Assembly: GCA_024704765.1 (NCBI GenBank)
Contig: JAKMXF010000255.1
Location: 62,001-126,000 of the forward strand
Length of the DNA stretch: 64,000 bases
From: Oopsacas minuta
Taxonomy: Eukaryota > Animalia > Porifera
Reading direction: 5' to 3'
Shown here: piece after piece, positions 17,623 to 45,877 of the stretch
Position numbering within the stretch: the first letter of the stretch is position 1
Layout of the letters: every line of letters begins with the position of its first letter
Notes under the pieces: generated by a model
Seen by the model: the letters and a program-made list of their open reading frames with translations, nothing else
What the model was told of the DNA's origin: nothing
The model's database searches: none
Made by a program: the position numbers and the translations under genes

Positions 17623-20600
17623 TTATATCTTATCACTGCTCTTCTTAGCTCCGTTCTGTAACAACATATCCAATTCATTGGATTTACTCGTCAAACTGAG
17701 AATACTCTCACAATCTCCTTCAGAAATATCTTGCGTATCTTCTGGTGAATTCCCAGCCTGATAGCTGAGCTGTTTGATGATAACAACTCCATGATTATCG
17801 TGTCCTGTCTTCTTCAAAATATCTTTACCGTCCTCTCGGATATAAGATCCACCCCCTCCGCCACTGAATCCTCCTCCTCCTCCTATATTAAATCAAATTT
17901 CACTTTCTATGTAAATTAATTAATTAGACTATCACAGGAATGTATGGTTAAAATACCATACATTCTTAAATTATCTATATATTATCACCTGAGTATCCTC
18001 CACCCCCTCCTCCCCCTAGCGACCCGATAGCTCCTCCCCCTCCGAAGCCCCCACACTCCCCTGCATCTCCTCCATTCATGAAACATTTCCCAGTTGATGA
18101 GTTATTGAAATAACCAGCACCTCCGTATCCGTGTGAGAGATCTCTTATTACAGCGTCTTTACCATTACCTCCTTTCTTCCCTCCTATACCAATTAGAAAT
18201 ATATATCTACGTATGCTATTTGTCTATTAAACGTTTACATACCTTCAGCATAGTAACGGCCCACTCCATTCCTACCCCACTCTTCAACGCTCCCATCTTG
18301 TCCATCAGGATCATCCTCATCGTATCCTCGGGTACCACCACCCCCTCCTGCTACGATGAGGGGATTATTCCTTCCATTGACAGACACGAATGTACCTCCA
18401 CCGCCTCCACTACTAGAAGCATGTCTCTGAGACATTCCCCCACACAGAATCTCTAGTCTATCTCCTCCCTAAACATGACAGTTAAAAACTACTCCAATTC
18501 AATACATATTTCGACATAACGGGAGTTGATTGTACTTATTCTAACTCACAGACAGATAGAAGATAGCAGTTATATCAGCTCCACATCCTCCCTTAGACAT
18601 CAGTCCATCAGCTGCCTTAGCACCTCTGGTCTGTATAGCATATGTACCGTCTATTGGTATAGAAATATCCACAATCTCACCTACATAATGTATATCATGG
18701 ATACAGTTAAGGAGATAGGAATGCATAGAAATATACCTGTATAACCTATTTCTAGAGGAAAGTCGTGGAAAGATCCATCAATATACTCTGACCATACTCC
18801 CCAGCCAGCAGCATTCTCTGATCGTGCTCTGAACTTGTATCTAGCTCCAGGACAGAGTCCATCAATACGTGCCTGACCCCCTCTAGCCGCATCCATAGAG
18901 AAAGAACAGGTCTGAGACTCTGCGAGCAAAACTTCTACTGACCCCCTATTGATCGAAGGAACGAATTCTCTCTCAATCTCATATCTTGTCACCTTACAGT
19001 CTGGAGGATCCCACTCCAAATAGAATAATCCCTTCTTGTGTACGCATACTATATTGGTTGGGACAGGTCCACCACCTACAGCTCCTATTTACAAGACAAA
19101 TAATATAAACTTAACATGTAACACTATCTCCTTATCCAGTGGAAACACACCTAAATCATCTAACTGCTTCAGGAAGGCTTCATCCATCATGACAGGTATA
19201 CCAGGTTGTACTAGTGTTCTGAGATGACTAGAGTTCTCCTCGCTAAGCACACGCTCTATAGCTTGAATAGCACTATCACTGTTTGGTAGGAATTCTGGTG
19301 GTTTCTTTTGTAGTAGTATATTAGCCATGTCGTTACTACTAGCTATGCTAGATGCTGAGATAGCTAGTTGCTGTTGTTGGTTCTGTAGACGTTCTAACCG
19401 GATACTGTACTCTTGTTCCACGGCATTCATCAACACTGCTCGGCGCCGTTGTAATGCTGACTATAGATAGAATTACATAAACATCAGCTGTGACCAAGTT
19501 CGTATGCGAATTTATACTTATTTTTATAAAATTTAAAATAATTAACTCACTTCATATTTCGCGATATCATCTCGTATCGTTTTCAGTGCAGCGTCCGCAG
19601 AAGGTCTCAGATCAGCTAAAATATCCTGCATCTCGTGTCTAGCTCTCTGTACACGAGATGTGTATATCCCTAGCCTCTGTAGTAAGAAGTGTAGCTTTGC
19701 TCTTCGTCGCTAAACAATAAGTATCAAATTAACTAACATAACTGTCAATTTATTATTTAATTACCTTTACTGCATCTGACAAAGGCTCTGGCGTAATATT
19801 AAGTAGGGAGTCTTCTTGTGAATTCATACAATGCTGACATAGAAACAGATTAGTATTAGAATCAAAGAAATCTGCTTTAAACCCGTGTATAGAACAAGTT
19901 ATATCCGAAGGAGAATTGCTACTCATATCTGTGATTAGTATAGGGTTGTGTGTTCTAGCTATTGCACTAGGTCTATCATGTTCATCTACAGAGCATTCTT
20001 CACATAGTTTAAAACCTGTAATTAAAAATAAACCTCGGTATATATGAATGACATCACATACCATTAGGGCCACATAGACTGCAAAACATGATAGCCTCTC
20101 TTTGGCTGCAGGACTGACAGATAAGTAGAGTCTGTACAGGGAGGTTATCTGAGGCGTCTACTAGTGCATAGTTTATAGGAAGTCCAGACAACAGGTTGTT
20201 AGGGAGAGCTGTTATTTTCCGACAAGCTGGACACTCTATAGTATTATGTGCGACTAATTGTGTAAGACATTTTGAACAGAAAGTATGTCCACAGCCTAAT
20301 ACACGAGGTTGTTTATCATTCATGCCAGAGAACATCTCTGAACATACATTGCATTCCAAGTTTGGTAGCGAGTTCTTCTCAAGGCCAGCATCTAAAGAAG
20401 TTGATATTAATGAATACACGTAATTATATAGAGTTTAAACTTACATATTTTAAAACTTACCGCCAATAGATCTGTACGATCCAAAGTCATAAGAGTGTTC
20501 TTTACGTAGAGTAGCAGAGGGGTCAGATATATTGATGCTACCATCTGTGTTGATTGAGATAGGAGAACTCTTACTGGGAAAGTTTGATGCTACCATCCTT

Positions 20601-21527
20601 GTTACGTTAGGTTCACAACCCTATAACATAATAATAATAATAATAATAGATTGAGGTATTAATTAGAAATTCAACCCATCTGTGTTATGTCTATACCTCC
20701 TGCTTAATCTAATTATATTCTATTACAATTCATTCTCGGACATTTCCTACACATTCTGCCATAAGGCACAAACTAGAATGACTTTGAAAATATTATTTAG
20801 TAAATAGCAAGGTCAGATTTTGTCCAATTTTTACCAAAAAACAACTTGCTAATATGCGAACTCCACGGCGGTTAGTATATTATAAGAAAAATAAATATAA
20901 CTCACTCTGTATTCACTACCATTGAGAGATCCATCAGTACGAGTTGTCGTGGATACTGTAATTAGTCCGTTAGTGAGTACTAATGGGGGGATGGGGTTGC
21001 TGGTGGGCGGGATAGGGTGTGTGAATTCGAACAGCTGATTAGGAGGGTGAGGTAGCGAGGTGGAGAGTATCGGGGTTGAGTGTACAAGTTGGGGATTGGA
21101 AATTAGATGAGAATGAACCAAATTAGTGGGAGGAAGTTGTACAGGATGTAAGAGGGGGTTAGCCGGGATCTGAGAGACTAAGCTAGGCATAGTAGTCGGT
21201 ATTAACGGATCCACGACCCCGTAATGGTTTAGATTAAGACCTGGTGATAACTGCATCTCTGACTCTGAAATGCTTGTTACCTGTTAGAAGAAATCAATAT
21301 TCTTAGCTTATATAGTCAATCTCTGGGCCTATAGGTGTTCATACATTACAAACTAATGTTAGAATTGTGTTCCGACATTCCTGCGTATATTTCAATCGAT
21401 TTACAAGTCACAAATGAACTCGATGCTATTTACTGTCTATATATACTTATACTGGAGTAGCTCTTATAGTAATGGAAATTGCAGGAATGTAGTTATCTGG
21501 TAATGTGTACAAAGAAATATGACCCAT
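17623..21527 (-). CDS. TRIM protein: Pro-rich N-terminus, RING, two B-boxes, coiled coil, FN3, C-terminal ALK/LTK-like glycine-rich domain
   Basis: RING CNVC...CGHTFCSKC...CPAC; B-box1 CQSC...FCSLC...LCEECSVDEH; B-box2 CSIH...LCQHC; coiled-coil exons; FN3 LEWDPP...GLCPGARYKFRARSENAAGWG; glycine-rich exons. Phase-consistent exons include 21527-21453, 20620-20461 and 20391 onward. The 5'-most exons are less certain. Confidence 0.8.
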
Positions 21528-22157
21528 CAAATTATCTGTAACTGCTAAAGGCTACCACTAAACTTAGCTGAGTTGTACTGCGTATTATTGGTCTGTTATA
21601 AGACAATACATTACAGGTGTAATGATAGAAGTTACGGTTTCAGACAGATTTCAGAGAGGGATTGAGGGTTTTCAGACACTAAACGTCCTCTCAGGCTATT
21701 TATACTTTCATAGTTTTGAAATCATAAATGCAGAGATTGAATATTTAAACCATGTAAAGCTCAACAAAATCTCTCTCGTATATTTCCAATTTACAGCTAT
21801 AAGTTATGTGAATATGCTGTCAGATTCTCAAATGAATCTAACCAGCTGACAAGCATAGGATGATGTATGAACGGATAATGTTGCCATATATTTATGTAAC
21901 TAGTAGAGCTAAGAGAGATACTCCTGACTGATGTGAAGGATAAACTTTTGTGAGTTCGAACCGAACCTTTTAAATAATAGATTCTATGGGTGGGATGGAG
22001 TGATTATGTTAAGAGGCCAAAGGCTTAGCATTCTCTGGCCTCAATGGCCTTGTTTTGCAGAAAGCCTCAGTAAATACCGTCCAGATATAACAGTAATCAG
22101 GTGACTATCATTATAATCGTAAATAGAAAACCAGAAATTAGATTTTTTAGAGGTGTG

Positions 22158-22283
22158 TCACGAAGTAACCTATCTCCTGAAGTAAAGTGTCCCTGAGGGC
22201 AAATTACTTCGAAGTAATTTGTAACCAATGAAGGAATGTGTGTTCCTTTTCTTTAGATTACTTCAGGGATTGGTACTTCGTGA
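22158..22283. repeat. Foldback inverted-repeat element with central perfect 22-bp palindrome
   Basis: tcacgaagtaacctatctcctgaagtaa ... ttacttcagggattggtacttcgtga; the centre caaattacttcgaagtaatttg (22200-22221) is self-complementary. Confidence 0.7.
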
Positions 22284-22925
22284 TGGCAGAAATTATGTAA
22301 ATTAAATCACGAGTAAAAAGCTATTATCTACAATTCAGGGAAACCCTTCTGTCTGCTATGAAATCAAATAACCTAGCTGAACATTTTCGTGCGGCTAAAT
22401 ATCCATCAATAATTGTCAGAAATAAAATAATCTCACCAAATTCGGCTGTGTGGTAGCGTGCTGCTGTTGTGGGATTGAAAGAATCGCTGGGTTTGATATT
22501 CTTCTCTGATTTTGTGCAATAAGATGAGCTTGTGGTAAATTAGTCTCTTCCAAGTGTAGAGCCATCCTATTTCTCTAAATTCTATTATAACCGCTAATAA
22601 TATGTATTTTTCTAAGAAACTCTAGAATTTGAAGGAGCCATATTGCTAAGGCCTAATTAGATTTAGCTATTCACCCTATTATACGTAGCGTTTACATATG
22701 ATACACAATTATGCTGATGTTTGTCACGCAGTAATCATGACCTACTTAACCCACTCAATTATCTATTGAGCGAAGTGATAATTGCCTGCAATAAACAAAC
22801 AAATAAACAAATAGAAATCAAATGTCAGAAGATATTTGAGTTGAATAATGATAAATTCTAAATCAGAATTATTGCTTTTTAACCATGGATTTGTTATAGA
22901 GACTTCTGAGTTTAAGTACTTATGA

Positions 22926-40695: not shown

Positions 40696-43600
40696 ATGTC
40701 TAATAGAGAAATATGGCTCGAGTCTTCTATGCATTCCAATTACAGCGAAGCTTCCGTTGGAATAATAGATTTGGATAATTTCGACCCATCTAATTCTCAA
40801 TTTCTGACACAGCCCCCTAGGTCACTACAGGGGAGTTACTCTAGTGAGATTGATCCAAACATTACGTGAGTAAGTTACAATTACAAGTATTTATAGCGGA
40901 AATTTTGATTCAATAATTCTCTTTAATTTATGACGATTCAAAGGTCCGACCTATTTAAGGCTACTTATTTAGAATAACAAAATTATTTCATAGCTATTAT
41001 TGTGTAATTACATTAATCGTCTTTTATTCAGTCTAGAAGAGGATACGTCACATGGAGCATTGACAGCTTCTCCAAACTCTACTCTGATGGCACCTTCACA
41101 ACCCATTAATCAACCCTCCTCCTATCCTAAGCTAAACCCATTTGAAGATAATAATAATATGGATCAACCAGTTCCTCAGTCTTTCGACGGACATTTAAGT
41201 CCTATGTTTCCTAACCAAGAGGTTAACTCTTCGTTTCCTAACCAAGAGATTGATCCTTTTACATTTCAGAAGCAGGAATTCGACGCTTCCCTCTTTTCAA
41301 ACGCGGAATTTCATGCGCCTGGTGTTAGCTTCATGGAGCAATTAGAAGGAGATGAGGATGATCTGAAGAGGAAGAACTCTGTCATACCAGAGCAGGAGAT
41401 CGTAGAAATCTCTCCTCCCAGCTCAAATGTACTTGACAAGCCTGGAGATTTTACTACATACTTCGGAGTACGTTCTAACGAACTGGGCAACTTGACTCAG
41501 CAAATTACTCCAACTTCTAGGCCTCGCTTCTCTGCCACAGCAATACGTTCTCCACACAGTTCAGCACAGCTGTTTAAGAACAATACACATTCTCCTGAGC
41601 CTGTGAGACTGAAAAATGAACACACACACCCTGATAGACACATAACTCCATCAACTGACTATATGACCCCCGATTTGTCAGAGAATAATAACGAAGATCA
41701 TTCAGATGACCTTCTTAACAAATCCAATGATCTTCTCAAGAAAGTAACATCTCTCCTAGAGAGCAAGAAGTTTAATGCTGATGAGTTTATTAAGACATTA
41801 GAATCTGAGGCTGAATTACATATACCAATAGCTACTAGCAAAACAGAGCATAATCTCCCATTACAAACCATTCCCTCTATGTCAGAGTACGAGCGTCTCC
41901 CTGAGCACTACCTCACTCCCTTGCCGCAGACCCCTATACATGCTACAGACATATATCCTACTCAGCAGGATAAGGACATCACACTACCAAACGCTTATAT
42001 CGTCCCTAACAACTCACATTCCATTGCTCCAAACCATCACGACTACCTTAAGCCTGTTCTAAGCGGAGATTCACTAGACAGCTGTAACATGGAAAACATA
42101 CCAAATTTCTCTTCTATCTTACGTCAGCATTCCTTATCCAATTCTTTTGATGAGGCAAGAGATAATAACGATCTTACACCATTCAATGACGTCACAATAC
42201 AACACGACTATGCTCAATCAGCTGACGATGTTAATAGCATCCCATTTGATAGTCCATCTCACAAACATTACAATAATGAAGTTACATTACAACACTCCTT
42301 GCTAACTAACTCAGCTGATGACGTTAGAGAAGTACAATACCGTCGTCGTAACTTATCGAGTACATCTGCTTCCTACTCAATGCCAGAAGGTCTTGACGCC
42401 CTGGCTTCCCTTCCTCCTCTCCCCTCTCCCCCTCCAGCTACATATATACATCATACAAGTCGCAGAGCTTCTAGAGAGGAGCTTACTCCTAAAGAGCTAT
42501 CGGTAGACATAGAATTAGAAGACGGGACAGCTCTTAACTGCTGTACTGGGGGTATAAACCACGCATTCCTTAATCTGACTAACCAATCTCCTTGCTGGGT
42601 ACAGACTCAGTTAGAATTCAAGAGTGTTAAATTTGGGTCTAACCTTATTGACACTCAGTCAGAGAGTATGCCATTCTCCATGTACAATAGGTGTATTCTG
42701 GGAACTGCCAAATCCGAACAAGTTAAGATATCATTCGCTCCTGGTAGTCCAGGCATTTATACTATTGAACTTGATGTGTATATATCAAAGATTGTTGATT
42801 CTTCTCTCGCTAAACCCTCCAAAACCTTCTCATTCACTGCCGAAGCAATAAAACCTGAAATATCACTTCTGTATAAACAGGAATCTTCTAAGGTGTTAGA
42901 TTTCGGTTTTGTGACAGAAGGCAAGTCTTATGAACAATGTGTTACAGTTGTCAACAAATCAAACTGTTCTCTCCCAATTAAGATATCTCTACCTACCAAG
43001 AAATTAACATGTAGAGACTTATCTCTATCTCTAACTTCTCATTCTGGTAAGAATCCTGACATACAGAAGGAGAGTCATATTTCAACAGTTCTAGAAGCTA
43101 GAGGAGAGGGAGTTAGAGGTAAAATGGACCTCTGGGTACGATTTAAACCCTCCTATCACCCCCAGATAGGTGTGGGATCAAAATCCCCTGCTCCTCTTGG
43201 GGAAATGAATTCAATTGTGGAAATATTTCTAGACGGCCCCTTCGCTAGCTCAACTTCTAAACTAATAAATTCCATCCCAATAACCGCGAATTTCGCAGAT
43301 TCCGACTTAGTAATTCTCGAATCAATCGACACACTAAGATTCGAGACATCAGTAACTCGTTCTCTCACCAGATCATTCACCCTACACAACCGAGGCAGCA
43401 TTCCTATTAGCCTAACAACGGAATTAGAACCATCTTCTACAGATTTCATGATATCACCATATCACATTAGTTTACAACCAGGTCAACAGTCTCCAGCCTC
43501 CCTTTCATACCGACCTTCCAAACATGAATCTACGTACACAGGGACACTACACATAATCTATAACCCAGGTAATAAGCGATACACCCTGAAGGTATCGGCA

Positions 43601-45877
43601 AGAGAGGAGGCCCCCGAGTCACCTCCGGACACTCAGGATTATAACCTCCCTCCCTCTCCCCCTCAAACAAGCAAACCCTCTCCTTCCAGAGACAACTATC
43701 TCTTAAGTAACATCCTCTCTCTCAATTGGGGGGCTACACAGCTTGACGAGTGCATTGAACGTAAGATTGTATTATTCAATACTAGTGATGATAATCTTAA
43801 CCTCAGTGTTGAGCTAAATTCTCAGTTCTTCTTTGTCAAAGATACAGATGACAAATTTAAATCTAGCTTTCGTATGAGCATACCAGCTCGTGTAAAGCTT
43901 CCTACAGTACTCACGTTTGCTCCAACAGAGCTTGTGGTGTATAATGACAACCTATCTATTACAGACTTATCTCATAACAAAGTGTTCCAGATACCACTGA
44001 CTGGTTACGGAGGTAAGAGCCAAATACTCATAGTTAATGCAGAGAGAACAACAGAAGGATACTGGATGAATATAGGAGAAGTTAAGAAATTGGAGAAGAA
44101 TATTTTCAAAGTATATTTACTCAATAATGGGATTAGAAAGGCTTACATAAAAGCTGTATGCAGAGATAACCAACCTAATAAACCTATATTGTCTCATACA
44201 CAAGTCAGTATAACTCCTTCAGAGTTCATAATATCACCACAAGACTACAAATCTATTCTAATTACCTTCTCACCAGGTGCTGATCATGCTCTGCTCTGTG
44301 AGAACTCTCCACACTGTATAGCTTATGTAAGCTTAACTACATGCGACTGTATGACTGCTAAGATATACTTCTCACAGCTAAGAGCTAAGAACCTACAAAT
44401 ACCTCCTCCATTTGATTATCTACACAAACTGTTCACTTTAGATATTTCAGAAGATGAGGATTACTCTCAATTCCAGCTATCTACACATCCTCCGTCTCCT
44501 CCAGCTGAGACAGAGGTAAGTATCCCTCTGATAGGTTACCCCCCTTCTGCCCCTTCTCTACCAAGACCCCGGCCCTCATCTGTACCTGTAACTCGCCCTC
44601 TCTCCCATGATGATATTATCTGGTCTAACAGGAGTAGTCCAATTGGTACAGCTCCAATACTGCACCAATCCCCTGACCTTATCCCCCCTCTGACCAACAA
44701 GAACAGACGGCGTTTGAGTAGACACTCTACTAACGACAGTCCTTCCCCCAAACCCAGTCACAGAGCTATCCATAGTCCATCCCGATCCGGTCCTAAGCCC
44801 GCATTCACTTTGTACCCCTCCCAATTATCTCTCTGCTCAGACTCAAGAGAACCAGCTAAACTATACATACATAATCTCTCTCATTCAATAGCTAAGTTTG
44901 CTGTAGTATATCCTAAGCAGTTTGTTACTGTATCACCAGCAAGAGGTAGCATAGATCCAGGACGTGAAAAACAGCTGTTAGTCAGTTCTCTATTGATGGA
45001 TATGACTGATCTACCTTGCTCGTTAACTGAATACTTAACAATACACTATGAGGATTCTGTTAAGAGCGTACCATTGAATATCCTAATGGAATCTCCTAGC
45101 CCTACAACACCTGTGAGAGAGAGTTTTGCTTCTGTTACCAAATACCTATCTCCTCCTAATATCCTATTCTCTCCTATTAAGAATAATTCTGTTGCAGACT
45201 TACCTATTACAATATCAAACCCACATAACTTCCCAATACATTGGAGCTTAGCTTCTATGGGGCAAGCTGCATATCAGGAAGGAGAGGAAGGATCCTTAGA
45301 AATACTCAAAACTAGCTATGCTGTATTCTTCTTCCATAGACTATCAGGTGGGATCGCTTCTCATGGTACAAGTAGTATAAGCGTTACATTCCAGCCTAGA
45401 AACCCCGGTACATATACTCAAACCTGGGAAATGCAGCTTACGAAAAGTGTGAAGATGATTGATAGCATAAAACTATCTGTTTCTGGTAAAGCGGAGGATA
45501 CAGAAGTCACTAAACAACCGCCAAATAACTCCCATAAAGAAACACATAAGTCTCACAGTAGAAGAGTATACCTAGATCCTGATATACTGAACTATCCACA
45601 AACCAGGCCTAACACTAGTAGTACACTGAAAGTATCAGTCTACAACAAATCTGACACATCAATTCAGTTTAATGTCAATGAGATATCTATACCATTCTCT
45701 ATCCACAGGCAGCATACAGTATTTACACTAGATCCTCGACATTGTGCTAGATTGCCTATAATCTTTAACCCACAGTCACAGGGTTATTTTGAAGAGGTTC
45801 TAGCATTGAAATCTTCAAACGGTAAGAAGCTACATGCCCTGCTGAAAGCTGAGAGCTGTTTTTATCCCAAATTATGA
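40696..45877 (+). CDS. CEP192: Centrosomal protein 192 / SPD-2 (tandem ASH/PapD-like domains)
   Basis: Exon 1 40696-40865 splices in phase to 41032-45877; the SPD2-domain signature LNWGATQL...FAPTEL...FQIPLTGYGGKSQI...YLLNNGIRKAYIKAV matches CEP192. Confidence 0.85.

What the first reader, a model, noticed from the sequence alone, without database searches (positions are those of the whole stretch)
17623..20391. TRIM E3 ligase ending in an ALK/LTK-type glycine-rich domain
Seen: RING-Bbox1-Bbox2-coiled coil-FN3, followed by exons encoding DISIPIDGTYAIQTRGAKAADG...GGCGADITAIFYLSGGDRLEILCGG...SSGGGGGTFVSVNGRNNPLIVAGGGGG...GKCFMNGGDAGECGGFGGGG...GGGGGGGYSG...GHDNHGVVIIKQL. Established: this parallels the extracellular glycine-rich/TNF-like domain of ALK/LTK (WKVPATDTYSISGYGAAGG, GGGGGATYV...PLIIAAGGGG, GGFGGGGG, GHGEVNIK), while FN3-bearing TRIMs such as MID1 and TRIM9 normally end in SPRY. 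Inference: a receptor-ectodomain-type fold is used as the substrate-binding module of a cytosolic ubiquitin ligase, with no signal peptide or TM seen. It may be a novel TRIM class and informative about the origin of the ALK glycine-rich domain.
Basis: partly seen in the sequence, partly recalled or inferred. Interest (0 to 1): 0.8.

Follow-up and report, generated by a model that had tools for sequence, protein, structure and literature searches.

The report
Sponge TRIM ligase with ALK-type domain
A glass-sponge gene encodes a cytosolic RING/B-box (TRIM-type) ubiquitin ligase whose last domain has the TNF-like/glycine-rich fold otherwise known from the outside of the ALK and LTK receptors; this pairing has not been described in the papers searched, although the scan had already met a paralogue in the same genome.

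Summary
The exons form one minus-strand gene. All ten exons I read match GenBank KAI6653699.1 ("hypothetical protein LOD99_3203", Oopsacas minuta, 957 aa) at 100%.

- **Gene extent:** Position 20391 is a splice acceptor, not the start.
- **Transcript support:** spliced contigs of run X4 confirm seven of the nine introns between E1 and E10. Vazella pourtalesii transcripts (86-100% identical per exon) and a relative with FN3 and the glycine-rich domain (GRD) in one exon cover the rest.
- **Architecture:** Pro-rich N-terminus, RING, B-box1, degenerate B-box2, coiled coil, FN3, GRD, acidic tail. No signal peptide or membrane segment.
- **GRD identity:** Pfam ALK_LTK_GRD misses the whole domain. 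A profile of 56 family GRD rows hits LTK/ALK structures (E 1e-17). The window protein's FN3-GRD model (pLDDT 92) matches ALK/LTK first (Foldseek E 4e-11). A relative's GRD model superposes on LTK/ALK at Z 26-27, rmsd 1.8-2.3 Å.
- **Family:** expanded in sponges (glass sponges and demosponges), labelled "hypothetical" or "Midline-1-like". Green algae attach a similar GRD to BTB-BACK, another E3 scaffold.

Substrate binding by the GRD is inferred, not shown. Earlier scan note s1-293502 found a paralogue on other DNA of this genome and read it the same way. Verdict: a new variant of a known kind; interest moderate to high.

The parts
22437..22565 (-). 5' coding exon of the GenBank model only (aa 1-43, starting MALHLEET). 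Membership in this gene is uncertain.
   Evidence: tblastn of P0211 residues 1-44 gives 100%. ATG at 22565 and donor GT at 22436-35. It is joined over a 1156-nt intron, far longer than the others. Vazella transcript P0215 starts at the Met equivalent to 21256. No reads were laid here.
20906..21280 (-). Pro-rich, low-complexity N-terminal exon (aa 44-168 of P0211). The in-frame Met at 21256 is the start used by Vazella transcript P0215.
   Evidence: tblastn 100%. Acceptor and donor read. Conserved in Vazella P0215 and P0161.
20461..20620 (-). Exon E1, a linker (GCEPNVTRMVASN...YRSIG) that ends in phase 1.
   Evidence: RNA joint 20461|20391 in run X4. 100% to P0211 177-221.
20062..20391 (-). Exon E2: C3HC4 RING finger and the first half of B-box1.
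   Evidence: Pfam zf-RING_5 2e-10 and zf-C3HC4 6e-9; zf-B_box profile positions 4-22. All eight RING ligands are invariant in A3. The nearest solved RING is TRIM23, E 9e-15.
19765..20015 (-). Exon E3: second half of B-box1 and a degenerate B-box2 (C-x2-H...C-x2-C retained).
   Evidence: zf-B_box profile positions 25-35. Invariant C/H columns. The profile aligns this region with the B-box2 plus coiled coil of TRIM72, TRIM5 and TRIM3. The E2/E3 junction is shown by an X4 loose end.
19551..19709 (-). Exon E4: first part of the coiled coil.
   Evidence: RNA joints 19765|19709 and 19551|19460. Aligned to the coiled coils of TRIM28 and TRIM25.
19151..19460 (-). Exon E5: rest of the coiled coil and the linker to FN3.
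   Evidence: RNA joint 19151|19084. 100% to P0211 469-571.
18737..19084 (-). Exon E6: fibronectin type III domain. The donor is at 18737|18736, not the alternative at 18746.
   Evidence: Pfam fn3 1.1e-7. The spacing FHDFPLEIGYTGEIV matches P0211, Ephydatia P0106 and P0039. The AF2 model shows a beta sandwich.
18550..18680 (-). Exon E7: first TNF-like strands of the TG/GRD domain (EIVDISIPIDGTYAIQTRGAKAADG...).
   Evidence: A1 profile positions 8-67 align with LTK/ALK at low compositional bias, i-Evalue 2e-6. RNA joint 18550|18468.
18243..18468 (-). Exon E8: GRD core (GGGGGTFV...LIVAGGGGGTRG and an acidic loop).
   Evidence: Pfam ALK_LTK_GRD 22.6 bits, E 1.2e-4. 24 of the 30 nearest Atlas feature hits carry PF12810. 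The E8/E9 junction is shown by X4 loose ends.
17989..18183 (-). Exon E9: glycine-rich segments (GYGGAGY...GGFGGGG...GGGGGGGYS).
   Evidence: 100% identical to P0211 808-871 and to the Vazella transcripts. Aligned to the LTK/ALK glycine-rich part.
17623..17882 (-). Exon E10: last glycine runs, the closing beta strands (GHDNHGVVIIKQL), a 45-aa acidic/Ser-rich tail and the TAA stop (17625-17623).
   Evidence: 100% to P0211 873-957. The closing strand aligns with 'hGeVeI' of LTK/ALK. The E9/E10 junction rests on P0211 and the Vazella transcripts; no printed RNA joint covers it.

Best explanation
This is Oopsacas minuta gene LOD99_3203. It is an expressed, multi-exon gene for a cytosolic TRIM-type (RING, B-box, coiled-coil) E3 ubiquitin ligase.

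Where MID1-like TRIMs carry FN3 followed by PRY-SPRY, this protein carries FN3 packed against a compact (about 233 aa) TG domain. The TG domain is a TNF-like beta sandwich with an inserted glycine-rich lattice, homologous to the ligand-binding domain of ALK/LTK.

Likely mechanism (inferred):
- The coiled coil dimerises the protein.
- The RING recruits a ubiquitin-charged E2.
- The FN3-TG module is the target-recognition end.

The TG domain is the best-conserved part of the family. It is 96% identical between two glass sponges, 58-60% to demosponges and about 50% to a green-algal BTB-BACK protein. It therefore probably binds a conserved partner rather than acting as a rapidly diversifying sensor.

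Shown here: the gene structure, its expression, the domain order, fold homology, and the absence of secretion signals. Inferred: E3 activity and the binding role.
For: **Gene and transcript**
- Run X4 gives spliced joints with GT..AG ends at five introns and matching loose ends at two more.
- All ten exons are 100% identical and colinear with GenBank KAI6653699.1.
- Trinity transcripts from Vazella pourtalesii carry the same open reading frame.
- In locus L002, a relative has coiled coil, FN3 and GRD in a single 1.5-kb exon.
- In a relative (run X5), every listed indel (9 of 9's table) falls in an intron or the 3' UTR.

**TRIM half**
- Pfam RING E 2e-10 and fn3 E 1e-7.
- The RING and B-box1 zinc ligands are invariant across the family.
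- The N-terminal profile hits the RBCC structures of TRIM3 (2e-24), TRIM28 (2e-19) and TRIM25 (1e-13).

**GRD**
- The family profile A1 hits LTK 7nx0 at 1.4e-17, ALK at about 3e-16 and SCD-2 at 9e-10. This includes a low-bias stretch.
- AlphaFold2 models score pLDDT 96.4 (a relative's GRD) and 92.4 with pTM 0.90 (the window protein's FN3-GRD).
- Foldseek's top 21 PDB hits for both models are all ALK/LTK/SCD-2.
- VIA-align gives Z 27.1, rmsd 1.8 Å over 202 residues and 35% identity to LTK. ALK residues 682-986 are covered. The next unrelated fold scores Z 8.9.

**Cytosolic location**
- The maximum Kyte-Doolittle score over 19 residues is 1.03, the N-terminus is hydrophilic, and no cysteine column is conserved in the GRD.

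**Recognition role**
- A similar GRD ends BTB-BACK proteins of green algae (Coccomyxa, Bryopsis, Chlorokybus), in the position that Kelch repeats occupy in KLHL adaptors.
- These algal GRDs are the nearest outgroup of the sponge clade in a quick tree.
Against: - No experiment or interaction data exist. E3 activity and the binding role follow only from domain order.
- Pfam ALK_LTK_GRD does not hit the full protein or its isolated GRD at E 0.01. Single exons find nothing in the PDB by phmmer.
- The FN3/GRD (E6/E7) and E9/E10 junctions were not among the printed RNA joints for this species. They rest on the GenBank model and on relatives.
- The high conservation of the GRD would also fit a structural or assembly role.
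- The true start codon is unsettled (21256 or 22565).
Confidence: 0.8

Rival explanations
1. The gene and fold are as described, but the TG/GRD domain is not a substrate receptor. It would instead serve as a rigid assembly, oligomerisation or anchoring module, for example lattice formation or cytoskeleton/membrane docking, as the COS-FN3 region does for MID1. Targets would be chosen elsewhere, for instance by the variable C-terminal tails.
For: The GRD is the most conserved part among paralogues (50-60%, against 25-35% for the N-terminal half). That is unlike diversifying recognition domains. Paralogues differ mainly in long low-complexity tails after the GRD (P0005, P0017, P0022, P0032). Phage fibre and tail-tip proteins share the fold at Z about 9.
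Against: In ALK/LTK the same domain is a ligand-binding module (PDB titles). It occupies the position of SPRY in TRIMs and of Kelch in BTB-BACK proteins. Nothing here points to self-association.
Confidence: 0.15
2. Gene-model artefact: the RING-FN3 exons and the glycine-rich exons belong to two adjacent genes wrongly joined.
For: The E6/E7 joint was not in the printed RNA tables for this species.
Against: The E6/E7 intron is only 56 nt. E7 starts in phase 1 without a start codon. Vazella transcripts and the SRR8466181 contig carry RING through GRD in one ORF. L002 has FN3 and GRD in one exon. RNA depth continues across both halves.
Confidence: 0.02
3. The glycine-rich tail is merely a low-complexity region, like keratin/loricrin or RGG regions, and its resemblance to ALK is compositional.
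For: The domain is 30% glycine. Pfam fails on the whole domain. The glycine-rich stretch has high bias scores in HMMER. Some relatives are auto-named 'keratin-like'.
Against: The non-glycine N-terminal strands align with LTK/ALK at bias 0.1-0.2 and i-Evalue 2e-6. Models reach pLDDT 92-96. Z is 27 at rmsd 1.8 Å over the whole TG domain, with a large gap to the next fold.
Confidence: 0.02

Closest known systems
ALK / LTK / SCD-2 TG supradomain (TNF-like plus glycine-rich domain; PDB 7nx1, 7nx0, 7lrz, 7mzy, 7n00, 7lir; Pfam PF12810 ALK_LTK_GRD)
   Same: Same fold over ALK residues 682-986. Z 25-27, rmsd 1.8-2.4 Å, 32-35% identity over 202-213 aligned residues; measured on the GRD model of relative P0039, which is about 50% identical to the window's GRD. 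Shared motifs: opening strands (...P..G.Y.I...GA.G), GGGGGxTFV, (I/L)(I/V)AAGGGG, GGFGGGG, GGGGGGY, and the closing strand hGxVxI.
   Different: The sponge domain is cytosolic and sits at the C-terminus of a RING E3. It is shorter (about 233 aa against about 305) and lacks the roughly 40-residue insert after the first strands. It has no following EGF-like domain, membrane segment or kinase. No cysteine column is conserved. It has a family-specific acidic loop, TRG-D..D.DG.DASLE.
Class C-I TRIMs (MID1/TRIM18, MID2, TRIM9, TRIM67, TRIM36, TRIM46): RING, B-box1, B-box2, coiled coil, COS, FN3, PRY-SPRY
   Same: RING, two B-box positions, coiled coil and FN3 occur in the same order. NCBI names a Dysidea relative 'Midline-1-like'.
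   Different: PRY-SPRY is replaced by the TG/GRD domain. A COS box could not be shown, and no MID1 hit appeared. B-box2 is degenerate. By sequence the RING and RBCC are nearer TRIM23, TRIM32, TRIM2/3 and TRIM28.
Green-algal BTB-BACK-GRD proteins (Coccomyxa subellipsoidea COCSUDRAFT_60000, Bryopsis BSKO_13501, Chlorokybus ChrspC234757S00921)
   Same: The GRD is of the same subtype: about 50% identity to the window's GRD and nearest outgroup in the tree. It sits at the C-terminal end of an E3-ligase scaffold.
   Different: The scaffold is a presumed CUL3 adaptor (BTB-BACK) rather than RING/B-box/coiled coil. There is no FN3. The organisms belong to a different kingdom.
Paralogue in the same genome (scan note s1-293502) and sponge relatives (Vazella TRINITY_DN5095, Dysidea avara XP_065906780.1/XP_065908500.1, Ephydatia muelleri KAL5457584.1)
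   Same: Same RING, B-box, coiled coil, FN3, GRD architecture. The GRD is 58-96% identical.
   Different: N-terminal halves are only 25-35% identical outside glass sponges. Tails after the GRD differ in length.

Membership tests
TRIM / RBCC ubiquitin ligases | N-terminal C3HC4 RING finger with all eight zinc ligands | tested here: met
   Pfam zf-RING_5 2e-10 and zf-C3HC4 6e-9. C21, C24, C41, H43, C46, C49, C61 and C64 are invariant in A3. The nearest solved RING is TRIM23, E 9e-15.
TRIM / RBCC ubiquitin ligases | At least one B-box zinc finger directly after the RING | tested here: met
   zf-B_box profile positions 4-22 on exon 2 and 25-35 on exon 3 are the two halves of one B-box split by an intron; each is below the cutoff alone. 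Seven Cys/His columns are invariant. The region aligns colinearly with the TRIM28 RBCC, positions 21-298.
TRIM / RBCC ubiquitin ligases | Second B-box (B-box2) with a full set of zinc ligands | tested here: inconclusive
   The region aligns with the B-box2 plus coiled coil of TRIM72, TRIM5 and TRIM3. Only C158, H161, C177 and C180 are invariant, and there is no Pfam hit.
TRIM / RBCC ubiquitin ligases | Coiled coil after the B-boxes | tested here: met
   Profile positions about 160-336 align with the coiled coils of TRIM3, TRIM25, TRIM28, TRIM72 and TRIM5.
Class C-I TRIM (MID1-like) | COS box between the coiled coil and FN3 | tested here: inconclusive
   No MID1 or COS hit appeared in PDB searches with the single protein or the profile. 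No COS model was available in the libraries used.
Class C-I TRIM (MID1-like) | FN3 domain | tested here: met
   Pfam fn3 1.1e-7 on exon 6 and 5e-6 on P0211. FN3 structures follow ALK/LTK in the fold search.
Class C-I TRIM (MID1-like) | C-terminal PRY-SPRY (B30.2) domain | tested here: not met
   No SPRY hit in Pfam. The C-terminal domain has the ALK/LTK TG fold.
ALK_LTK_GRD (Pfam PF12810) / TG supradomain | Score at or above Pfam's gathering cutoff (24.5 bits) | tested here: not met
   Exon 8 alone scores 22.6 bits. P0211 and P0211:680-915 give no hit at E 0.01. Several relatives reach 22-25 bits.
ALK_LTK_GRD (Pfam PF12810) / TG supradomain | Significant sequence-profile similarity to the solved ALK/LTK domains, including the non-glycine strands | tested here: met
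   Profile A1 against the PDB: LTK 1.4e-17, ALK 2.6e-16, SCD-2 8.9e-10. The stretch at positions 8-67 has bias 0.1-0.2 and i-Evalue 2e-6.
ALK_LTK_GRD (Pfam PF12810) / TG supradomain | TNF-like beta sandwich with an inserted glycine-rich lattice (the fold of ALK 682-986) | tested here: met
   Z 27.1, rmsd 1.8 Å over 202 aligned residues (LTK). Z 26, rmsd 1.8-2.3 Å over 205-213 residues (ALK) (on the model of relative P0039's GRD). The window protein's own model also has ALK/LTK as its top 21 hits. TNF-family ligands follow at Z 4-5.
ALK_LTK_GRD (Pfam PF12810) / TG supradomain | Polyglycine-II helices in the glycine-rich part | not testable with these tools
DSSP shows non-helix, non-strand segments at pLDDT above 95 that superpose on the ALK lattice.
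ALK/LTK receptor tyrosine kinases | Signal peptide, membrane segment and tyrosine-kinase domain; EGF-like module after the TG domain | tested here: not met
   No kinase or EGF hit in Pfam. The maximum hydropathy score is 1.03 and the N-terminus is hydrophilic. The protein ends 44 residues after the GRD.

The most novel reading that the evidence does not exclude
The GRDs that end sponge TRIMs and green-algal BTB-BACK adaptors form one old, conserved, cytosolic 'E3-type' branch of the TG fold. This branch would recognise a conserved intracellular ligand, possibly through its invariant acidic TRG-D..D.DG.DASLE loop. That would make the TG domain a third general substrate-receptor fold for ubiquitin ligases, beside SPRY and Kelch. 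The ALK/LTK ectodomain would then be an extracellular offshoot of a fold that already existed inside early animal cells.
Probability: 0.2. Interest if true: 0.8.

Novelty: new variant of a known kind. Interest (0 to 1): 0.58.

Why it matters
When the ALK/LTK TG domain was solved in 2021 it looked like a special receptor ectodomain. Here the same fold is the C-terminal module of a cytosolic TRIM ligase family that is expanded in sponges. A close version ends BTB-BACK proteins of green algae.

- If the domain is the target-binding end, it is a new kind of substrate receptor for two major E3 scaffold families, and its ligand is unknown.
- Standard annotation misses it, because Pfam fails on the whole domain. 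The family is therefore hidden under 'hypothetical' and 'Midline-1-like' labels.
- For the origin of ALK the value is limited. Extracellular proteins with this fold exist in cnidarians and bacteria and are at least as likely to be the sources.

Tried and rejected
- **phmmer of single exons against the PDB:** exons 8 and 9 found nothing. Only a family profile reached ALK/LTK.
- **Pfam on the whole protein and on the isolated GRD:** no ALK_LTK_GRD hit at E 0.01.
- **Possible tandem paralogue in the window:** a second G-rich minus-strand skew at 42-46 kb turned out to be a plus-strand Cep192 gene.
- **My first start codon (ATG 20596):** too far 3'. The GenBank model and the Vazella transcripts extend the ORF upstream.
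- **Alternative E6 donor at 18746:** rejected, because relatives keep the three extra residues.
- **Contamination as the source of the Chlorokybus BTB-BACK-GRD:** made unlikely by homologues on large Coccomyxa and Bryopsis contigs. P0008 itself has no contig on record.
- **Paper searches:** PF12810, ALK_LTK_GRD/IPR055163, polyglycine II with ALK, TRIM with sponge, SRR8466181, and Oopsacas with TRIM. No description of a TRIM or BTB protein with this domain was found.
- **Joined protein:** I did not type or join the spliced exons. Exons were searched one by one by reference. The full-length analyses used the database protein P0211, which equals the joined exons.
- **ALK/LTK in the tree:** they could not be added, because no tool returned their sequences under an id.
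Full report
**1. What is in the sequence**

The region is AT-rich eukaryotic DNA with short introns. I read ten minus-strand exons with GT..AG borders and matching phases:
- E1 20620-20461
- E2 20391-20062
- E3 20015-19765
- E4 19709-19551
- E5 19460-19151
- E6 19084-18737
- E7 18680-18550
- E8 18468-18243
- E9 18183-17989
- E10 17882-17623, ending at a TAA stop

An ATG at that point is out of frame.

Exon-by-exon Pfam gave:
- RING fingers on E2 (zf-RING_5, E 2e-10).
- The two halves of one B-box split between E2 and E3.
- fn3 on E6 (E 1e-7).
- ALK_LTK_GRD on E8 alone (22.6 bits, E 1.2e-4, just under the 24.5-bit cutoff).

**2. Is it one gene, and is it expressed?**

Run X4 comes from the same sample as the genome runs. 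It behaves as RNA: short contigs, Illumina adapters and no depth in introns.
- It shows spliced joints with CT..AC ends (GT..AG on the minus strand) at E1/E2, E3/E4, E4/E5, E5/E6 and E7/E8.
- Loose ends match E2/E3 and E8/E9.
- The E6/E7 and E9/E10 joints were not in the printed tables.

Three other lines close those two gaps.
- *GenBank model.* KAI6653699.1 ("hypothetical protein LOD99_3203 [Oopsacas minuta]", 957 aa; P0211) matches all ten exon translations at 100%. The match is colinear, with exactly one residue between exons at each phase-1 junction. The window is therefore from the glass sponge O. minuta, as earlier scan notes had suggested.
- *Vazella transcripts.* Trinity transcripts of another glass sponge, Vazella pourtalesii (P0161, P0215), carry the same ORF at 86-100% identity per exon.
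- *More distant relatives.* A 2669-nt contig from SRR8466181 has RING through GRD in one uninterrupted ORF. On a 1.29-Mb contig (L002), coiled coil, FN3 and GRD lie in a single exon.

In run X5, a relative 90-95% identical at the DNA level, every listed indel (9 of 9 in the table) lies in an intron or the 3' UTR.

There is a Pro-rich exon at 21280-20906 with a Met at 21256. GenBank alone adds an exon at 22565-22437, joined across a 1156-nt intron.

Full-length analyses used P0211.

**3. The N-terminal half is a genuine TRIM**

In an alignment of seven full-length family members:
- All eight RING ligands and seven B-box1 ligands are invariant.
- The second B-box keeps only four Cys/His positions.

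A profile of this region hits solved RBCC structures colinearly:
- TRIM3, E 2.4e-24
- TRIM28 RBCC, positions 21-298, E 1.6e-19
- TRIM25, positions 18-323, E 1e-13
- B-box2 plus coiled coil of TRIM72 and TRIM5

The nearest RING is TRIM23. No MID1 or COS-box match appeared, so a COS box is not shown.

**4. The C-terminal domain**

The simple tests fail.
- Single exons find nothing in the PDB.
- Pfam ALK_LTK_GRD does not hit P0211 or its isolated GRD at E 0.01. This is probably because composition correction removes the score of the glycine runs.

A search of 1.84 billion representative proteins with exon 8 found 88 relatives, none of them named. From these I built alignment A1, with 52 relatives' GRDs plus the window's four GRD exons as rows.

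The A1 profile hits LTK (7nx0, E 1.4e-17), ALK (about 3e-16) and C. elegans SCD-2 (9e-10). The non-glycine opening strands alone score 30.8 bits at bias 0.2.

Structure predictions and fold searches:
- AlphaFold2 on a relative's GRD gave pLDDT 96.4 and pTM 0.93.
- AlphaFold2 on the window protein's own FN3-GRD (P0211 563-915) gave pLDDT 92.4 and pTM 0.90, which suggests a fixed FN3-GRD arrangement.
- For both models, Foldseek's top 21 PDB hits are all ALK, LTK or SCD-2 (E 1e-11 to 8e-7). FN3 proteins or phage fibres follow.
- For the relative's GRD model, VIA-align gives Z 27.1, rmsd 1.8 Å, 202 residues and 35% identity to the LTK TG domain. ALK 682-986 gives Z about 26. The next fold scores Z 8.9 (phage fibres), then TNF ligands at Z 4-5.

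The domain is therefore the complete TNF-like plus glycine-rich supradomain. It is about 70 residues shorter than ALK's and lacks the EGF-like module.

**5. Cellular location**

There is no hydrophobic segment (maximum Kyte-Doolittle score over 19 residues is 1.03) and the N-termini are hydrophilic. No cysteine column is conserved in the GRD; the best is 23 of 52 rows. Together with the zinc fingers, this points to a cytosolic or nuclear protein.

**6. The family**

A word search with the Ephydatia GRD found at least 172 proteins in the allowed length range. Most have FN3 directly before the GRD, and several lie on the same contigs.

Named members are all sponges:
- Oopsacas and Vazella (Hexactinellida)
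- Dysidea avara XP_065906780.1 "Midline-1-like", XP_065906781.1 "TRIM23-like", and XP_065908500/1 "uncharacterized"
- Ephydatia muelleri KAL5457584.1 "hypothetical"

A similar GRD ends BTB-BACK proteins of green algae: Coccomyxa COCSUDRAFT_60000, Bryopsis BSKO_13501 and Chlorokybus.

In a quick maximum-likelihood tree of 49 GRDs, rooted on a bacterial autotransporter GRD:
- The FN3/TRIM-linked GRDs form one clade (SH-aLRT 99).
- The glass-sponge pair branches first within it.
- The algal BTB-BACK GRDs are the nearest outgroups (support 89).
- ALK/LTK could not be included.

The window's GRD is 96% identical to Vazella, 58-60% to demosponges, about 50% to Chlorokybus and 35-44% to other contexts.

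ESM-Atlas fold neighbours show the fold in bacterial surface proteins, in cnidarian secreted PAN/FN2/EGF proteins and in chordate ALK/LTK. All of these are extracellular contexts.

**7. How it probably works**

By analogy with other TRIMs, the coiled coil dimerises the protein, the RING binds a charged E2, and the C-terminal module selects the target. This is established knowledge of the family and was not tested here.

The GRD stands where SPRY stands in MID1-like TRIMs and where Kelch stands in BTB-BACK adaptors. This is the main argument for a recognition role.

The GRD is the most conserved part of the family. It also has an invariant acidic loop (TRG-D..D.DG.DASLE) that ALK lacks. I therefore favour a conserved ligand over a fast-evolving sensor. 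The main rival is an assembly or anchoring role.

**8. Novelty and score**

No paper in the searched library describes this architecture. The sequences are public but labelled hypothetical or mis-named.

The scan had already noted a paralogue on another piece of this genome, with the same conclusion (s1-293502). This is thus a second member of that family, checked independently here.

I rate it a new variant of a known kind, interest 0.58.

Noticed in passing
window 41000-45877 (+): An intronless 1625-aa ORF is a Cep192/SPD-2 centrosome protein orthologue. Pfam finds Cep192 domains 1-8, with E down to 2e-32. Its minus-strand G-richness had looked like a possible second GRD gene.
   Followed up: partly
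P0232 (Coccomyxa subellipsoidea COCSUDRAFT_60000), P0237 (Bryopsis BSKO_13501), P0008 (Chlorokybus): Green algae have BTB-BACK proteins that end in the same subtype of TG/GRD domain (GRD at about 295-540). These GRDs are about 50% identical to the sponge GRD, which is strikingly high for animals against algae. Ancient conservation or gene transfer was not resolved.
   Followed up: partly
L004 332-2113 (P0079, JGI metagenome 3300028898): A Q-rich protein has two B-boxes, a long coiled coil and a partial GRD, with no RING or FN3 detected. It is probably from a protist, which suggests B-box-linked GRDs outside sponges.
   Followed up: no
P0043 / P0105 (ENA contigs): A GRD is followed by a PA (protease-associated) domain. 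No RING was found, and the organism is unknown.
   Followed up: no
PDB 7ypx, 7yfw (cyanophage Pam3 fibre) and 9d93 (mycobacteriophage Bxb1 tail tip): Phage fibre and tail-tip proteins are the only non-ALK structures sharing the TG-like fold at Z about 9 (129-131 residues aligned).
   Followed up: no
window 18184-18242 (E8/E9 intron); Vazella isoforms P0213 and P0214: Two Vazella transcript isoforms end two residues after the exon-8 equivalent. That is what retention of this intron would give (GT ATG TAA) in the window's sequence (the Vazella intron was not seen), and it would truncate the GRD.
   Followed up: no
window 22437-22565 and 21281-22436: GenBank's first coding exon is joined across a 1156-nt intron, while all other introns are 46-285 nt. 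The Vazella transcript starts at the Met equivalent to 21256, so this exon may not belong to the gene.
   Followed up: partly
L002 and L003 (ENA ERZ25072258 contig; GCA_022076465.1 JAKCWJ010001033.1): In two unnamed assemblies a TRIM-GRD gene lies next to a phosphofructokinase gene, and further FN3-GRD genes lie nearby. This points to conserved synteny and tandem paralogues.
   Followed up: no
A2 columns, P0211 residues about 777-795 (window exon E8, 18243-18468): A nearly invariant acidic loop, TRG-D-x2-D-x-DG-x-DASLE, resembles a calcium-binding loop and has no counterpart in the ALK alignment. Its function is untested.
   Followed up: no
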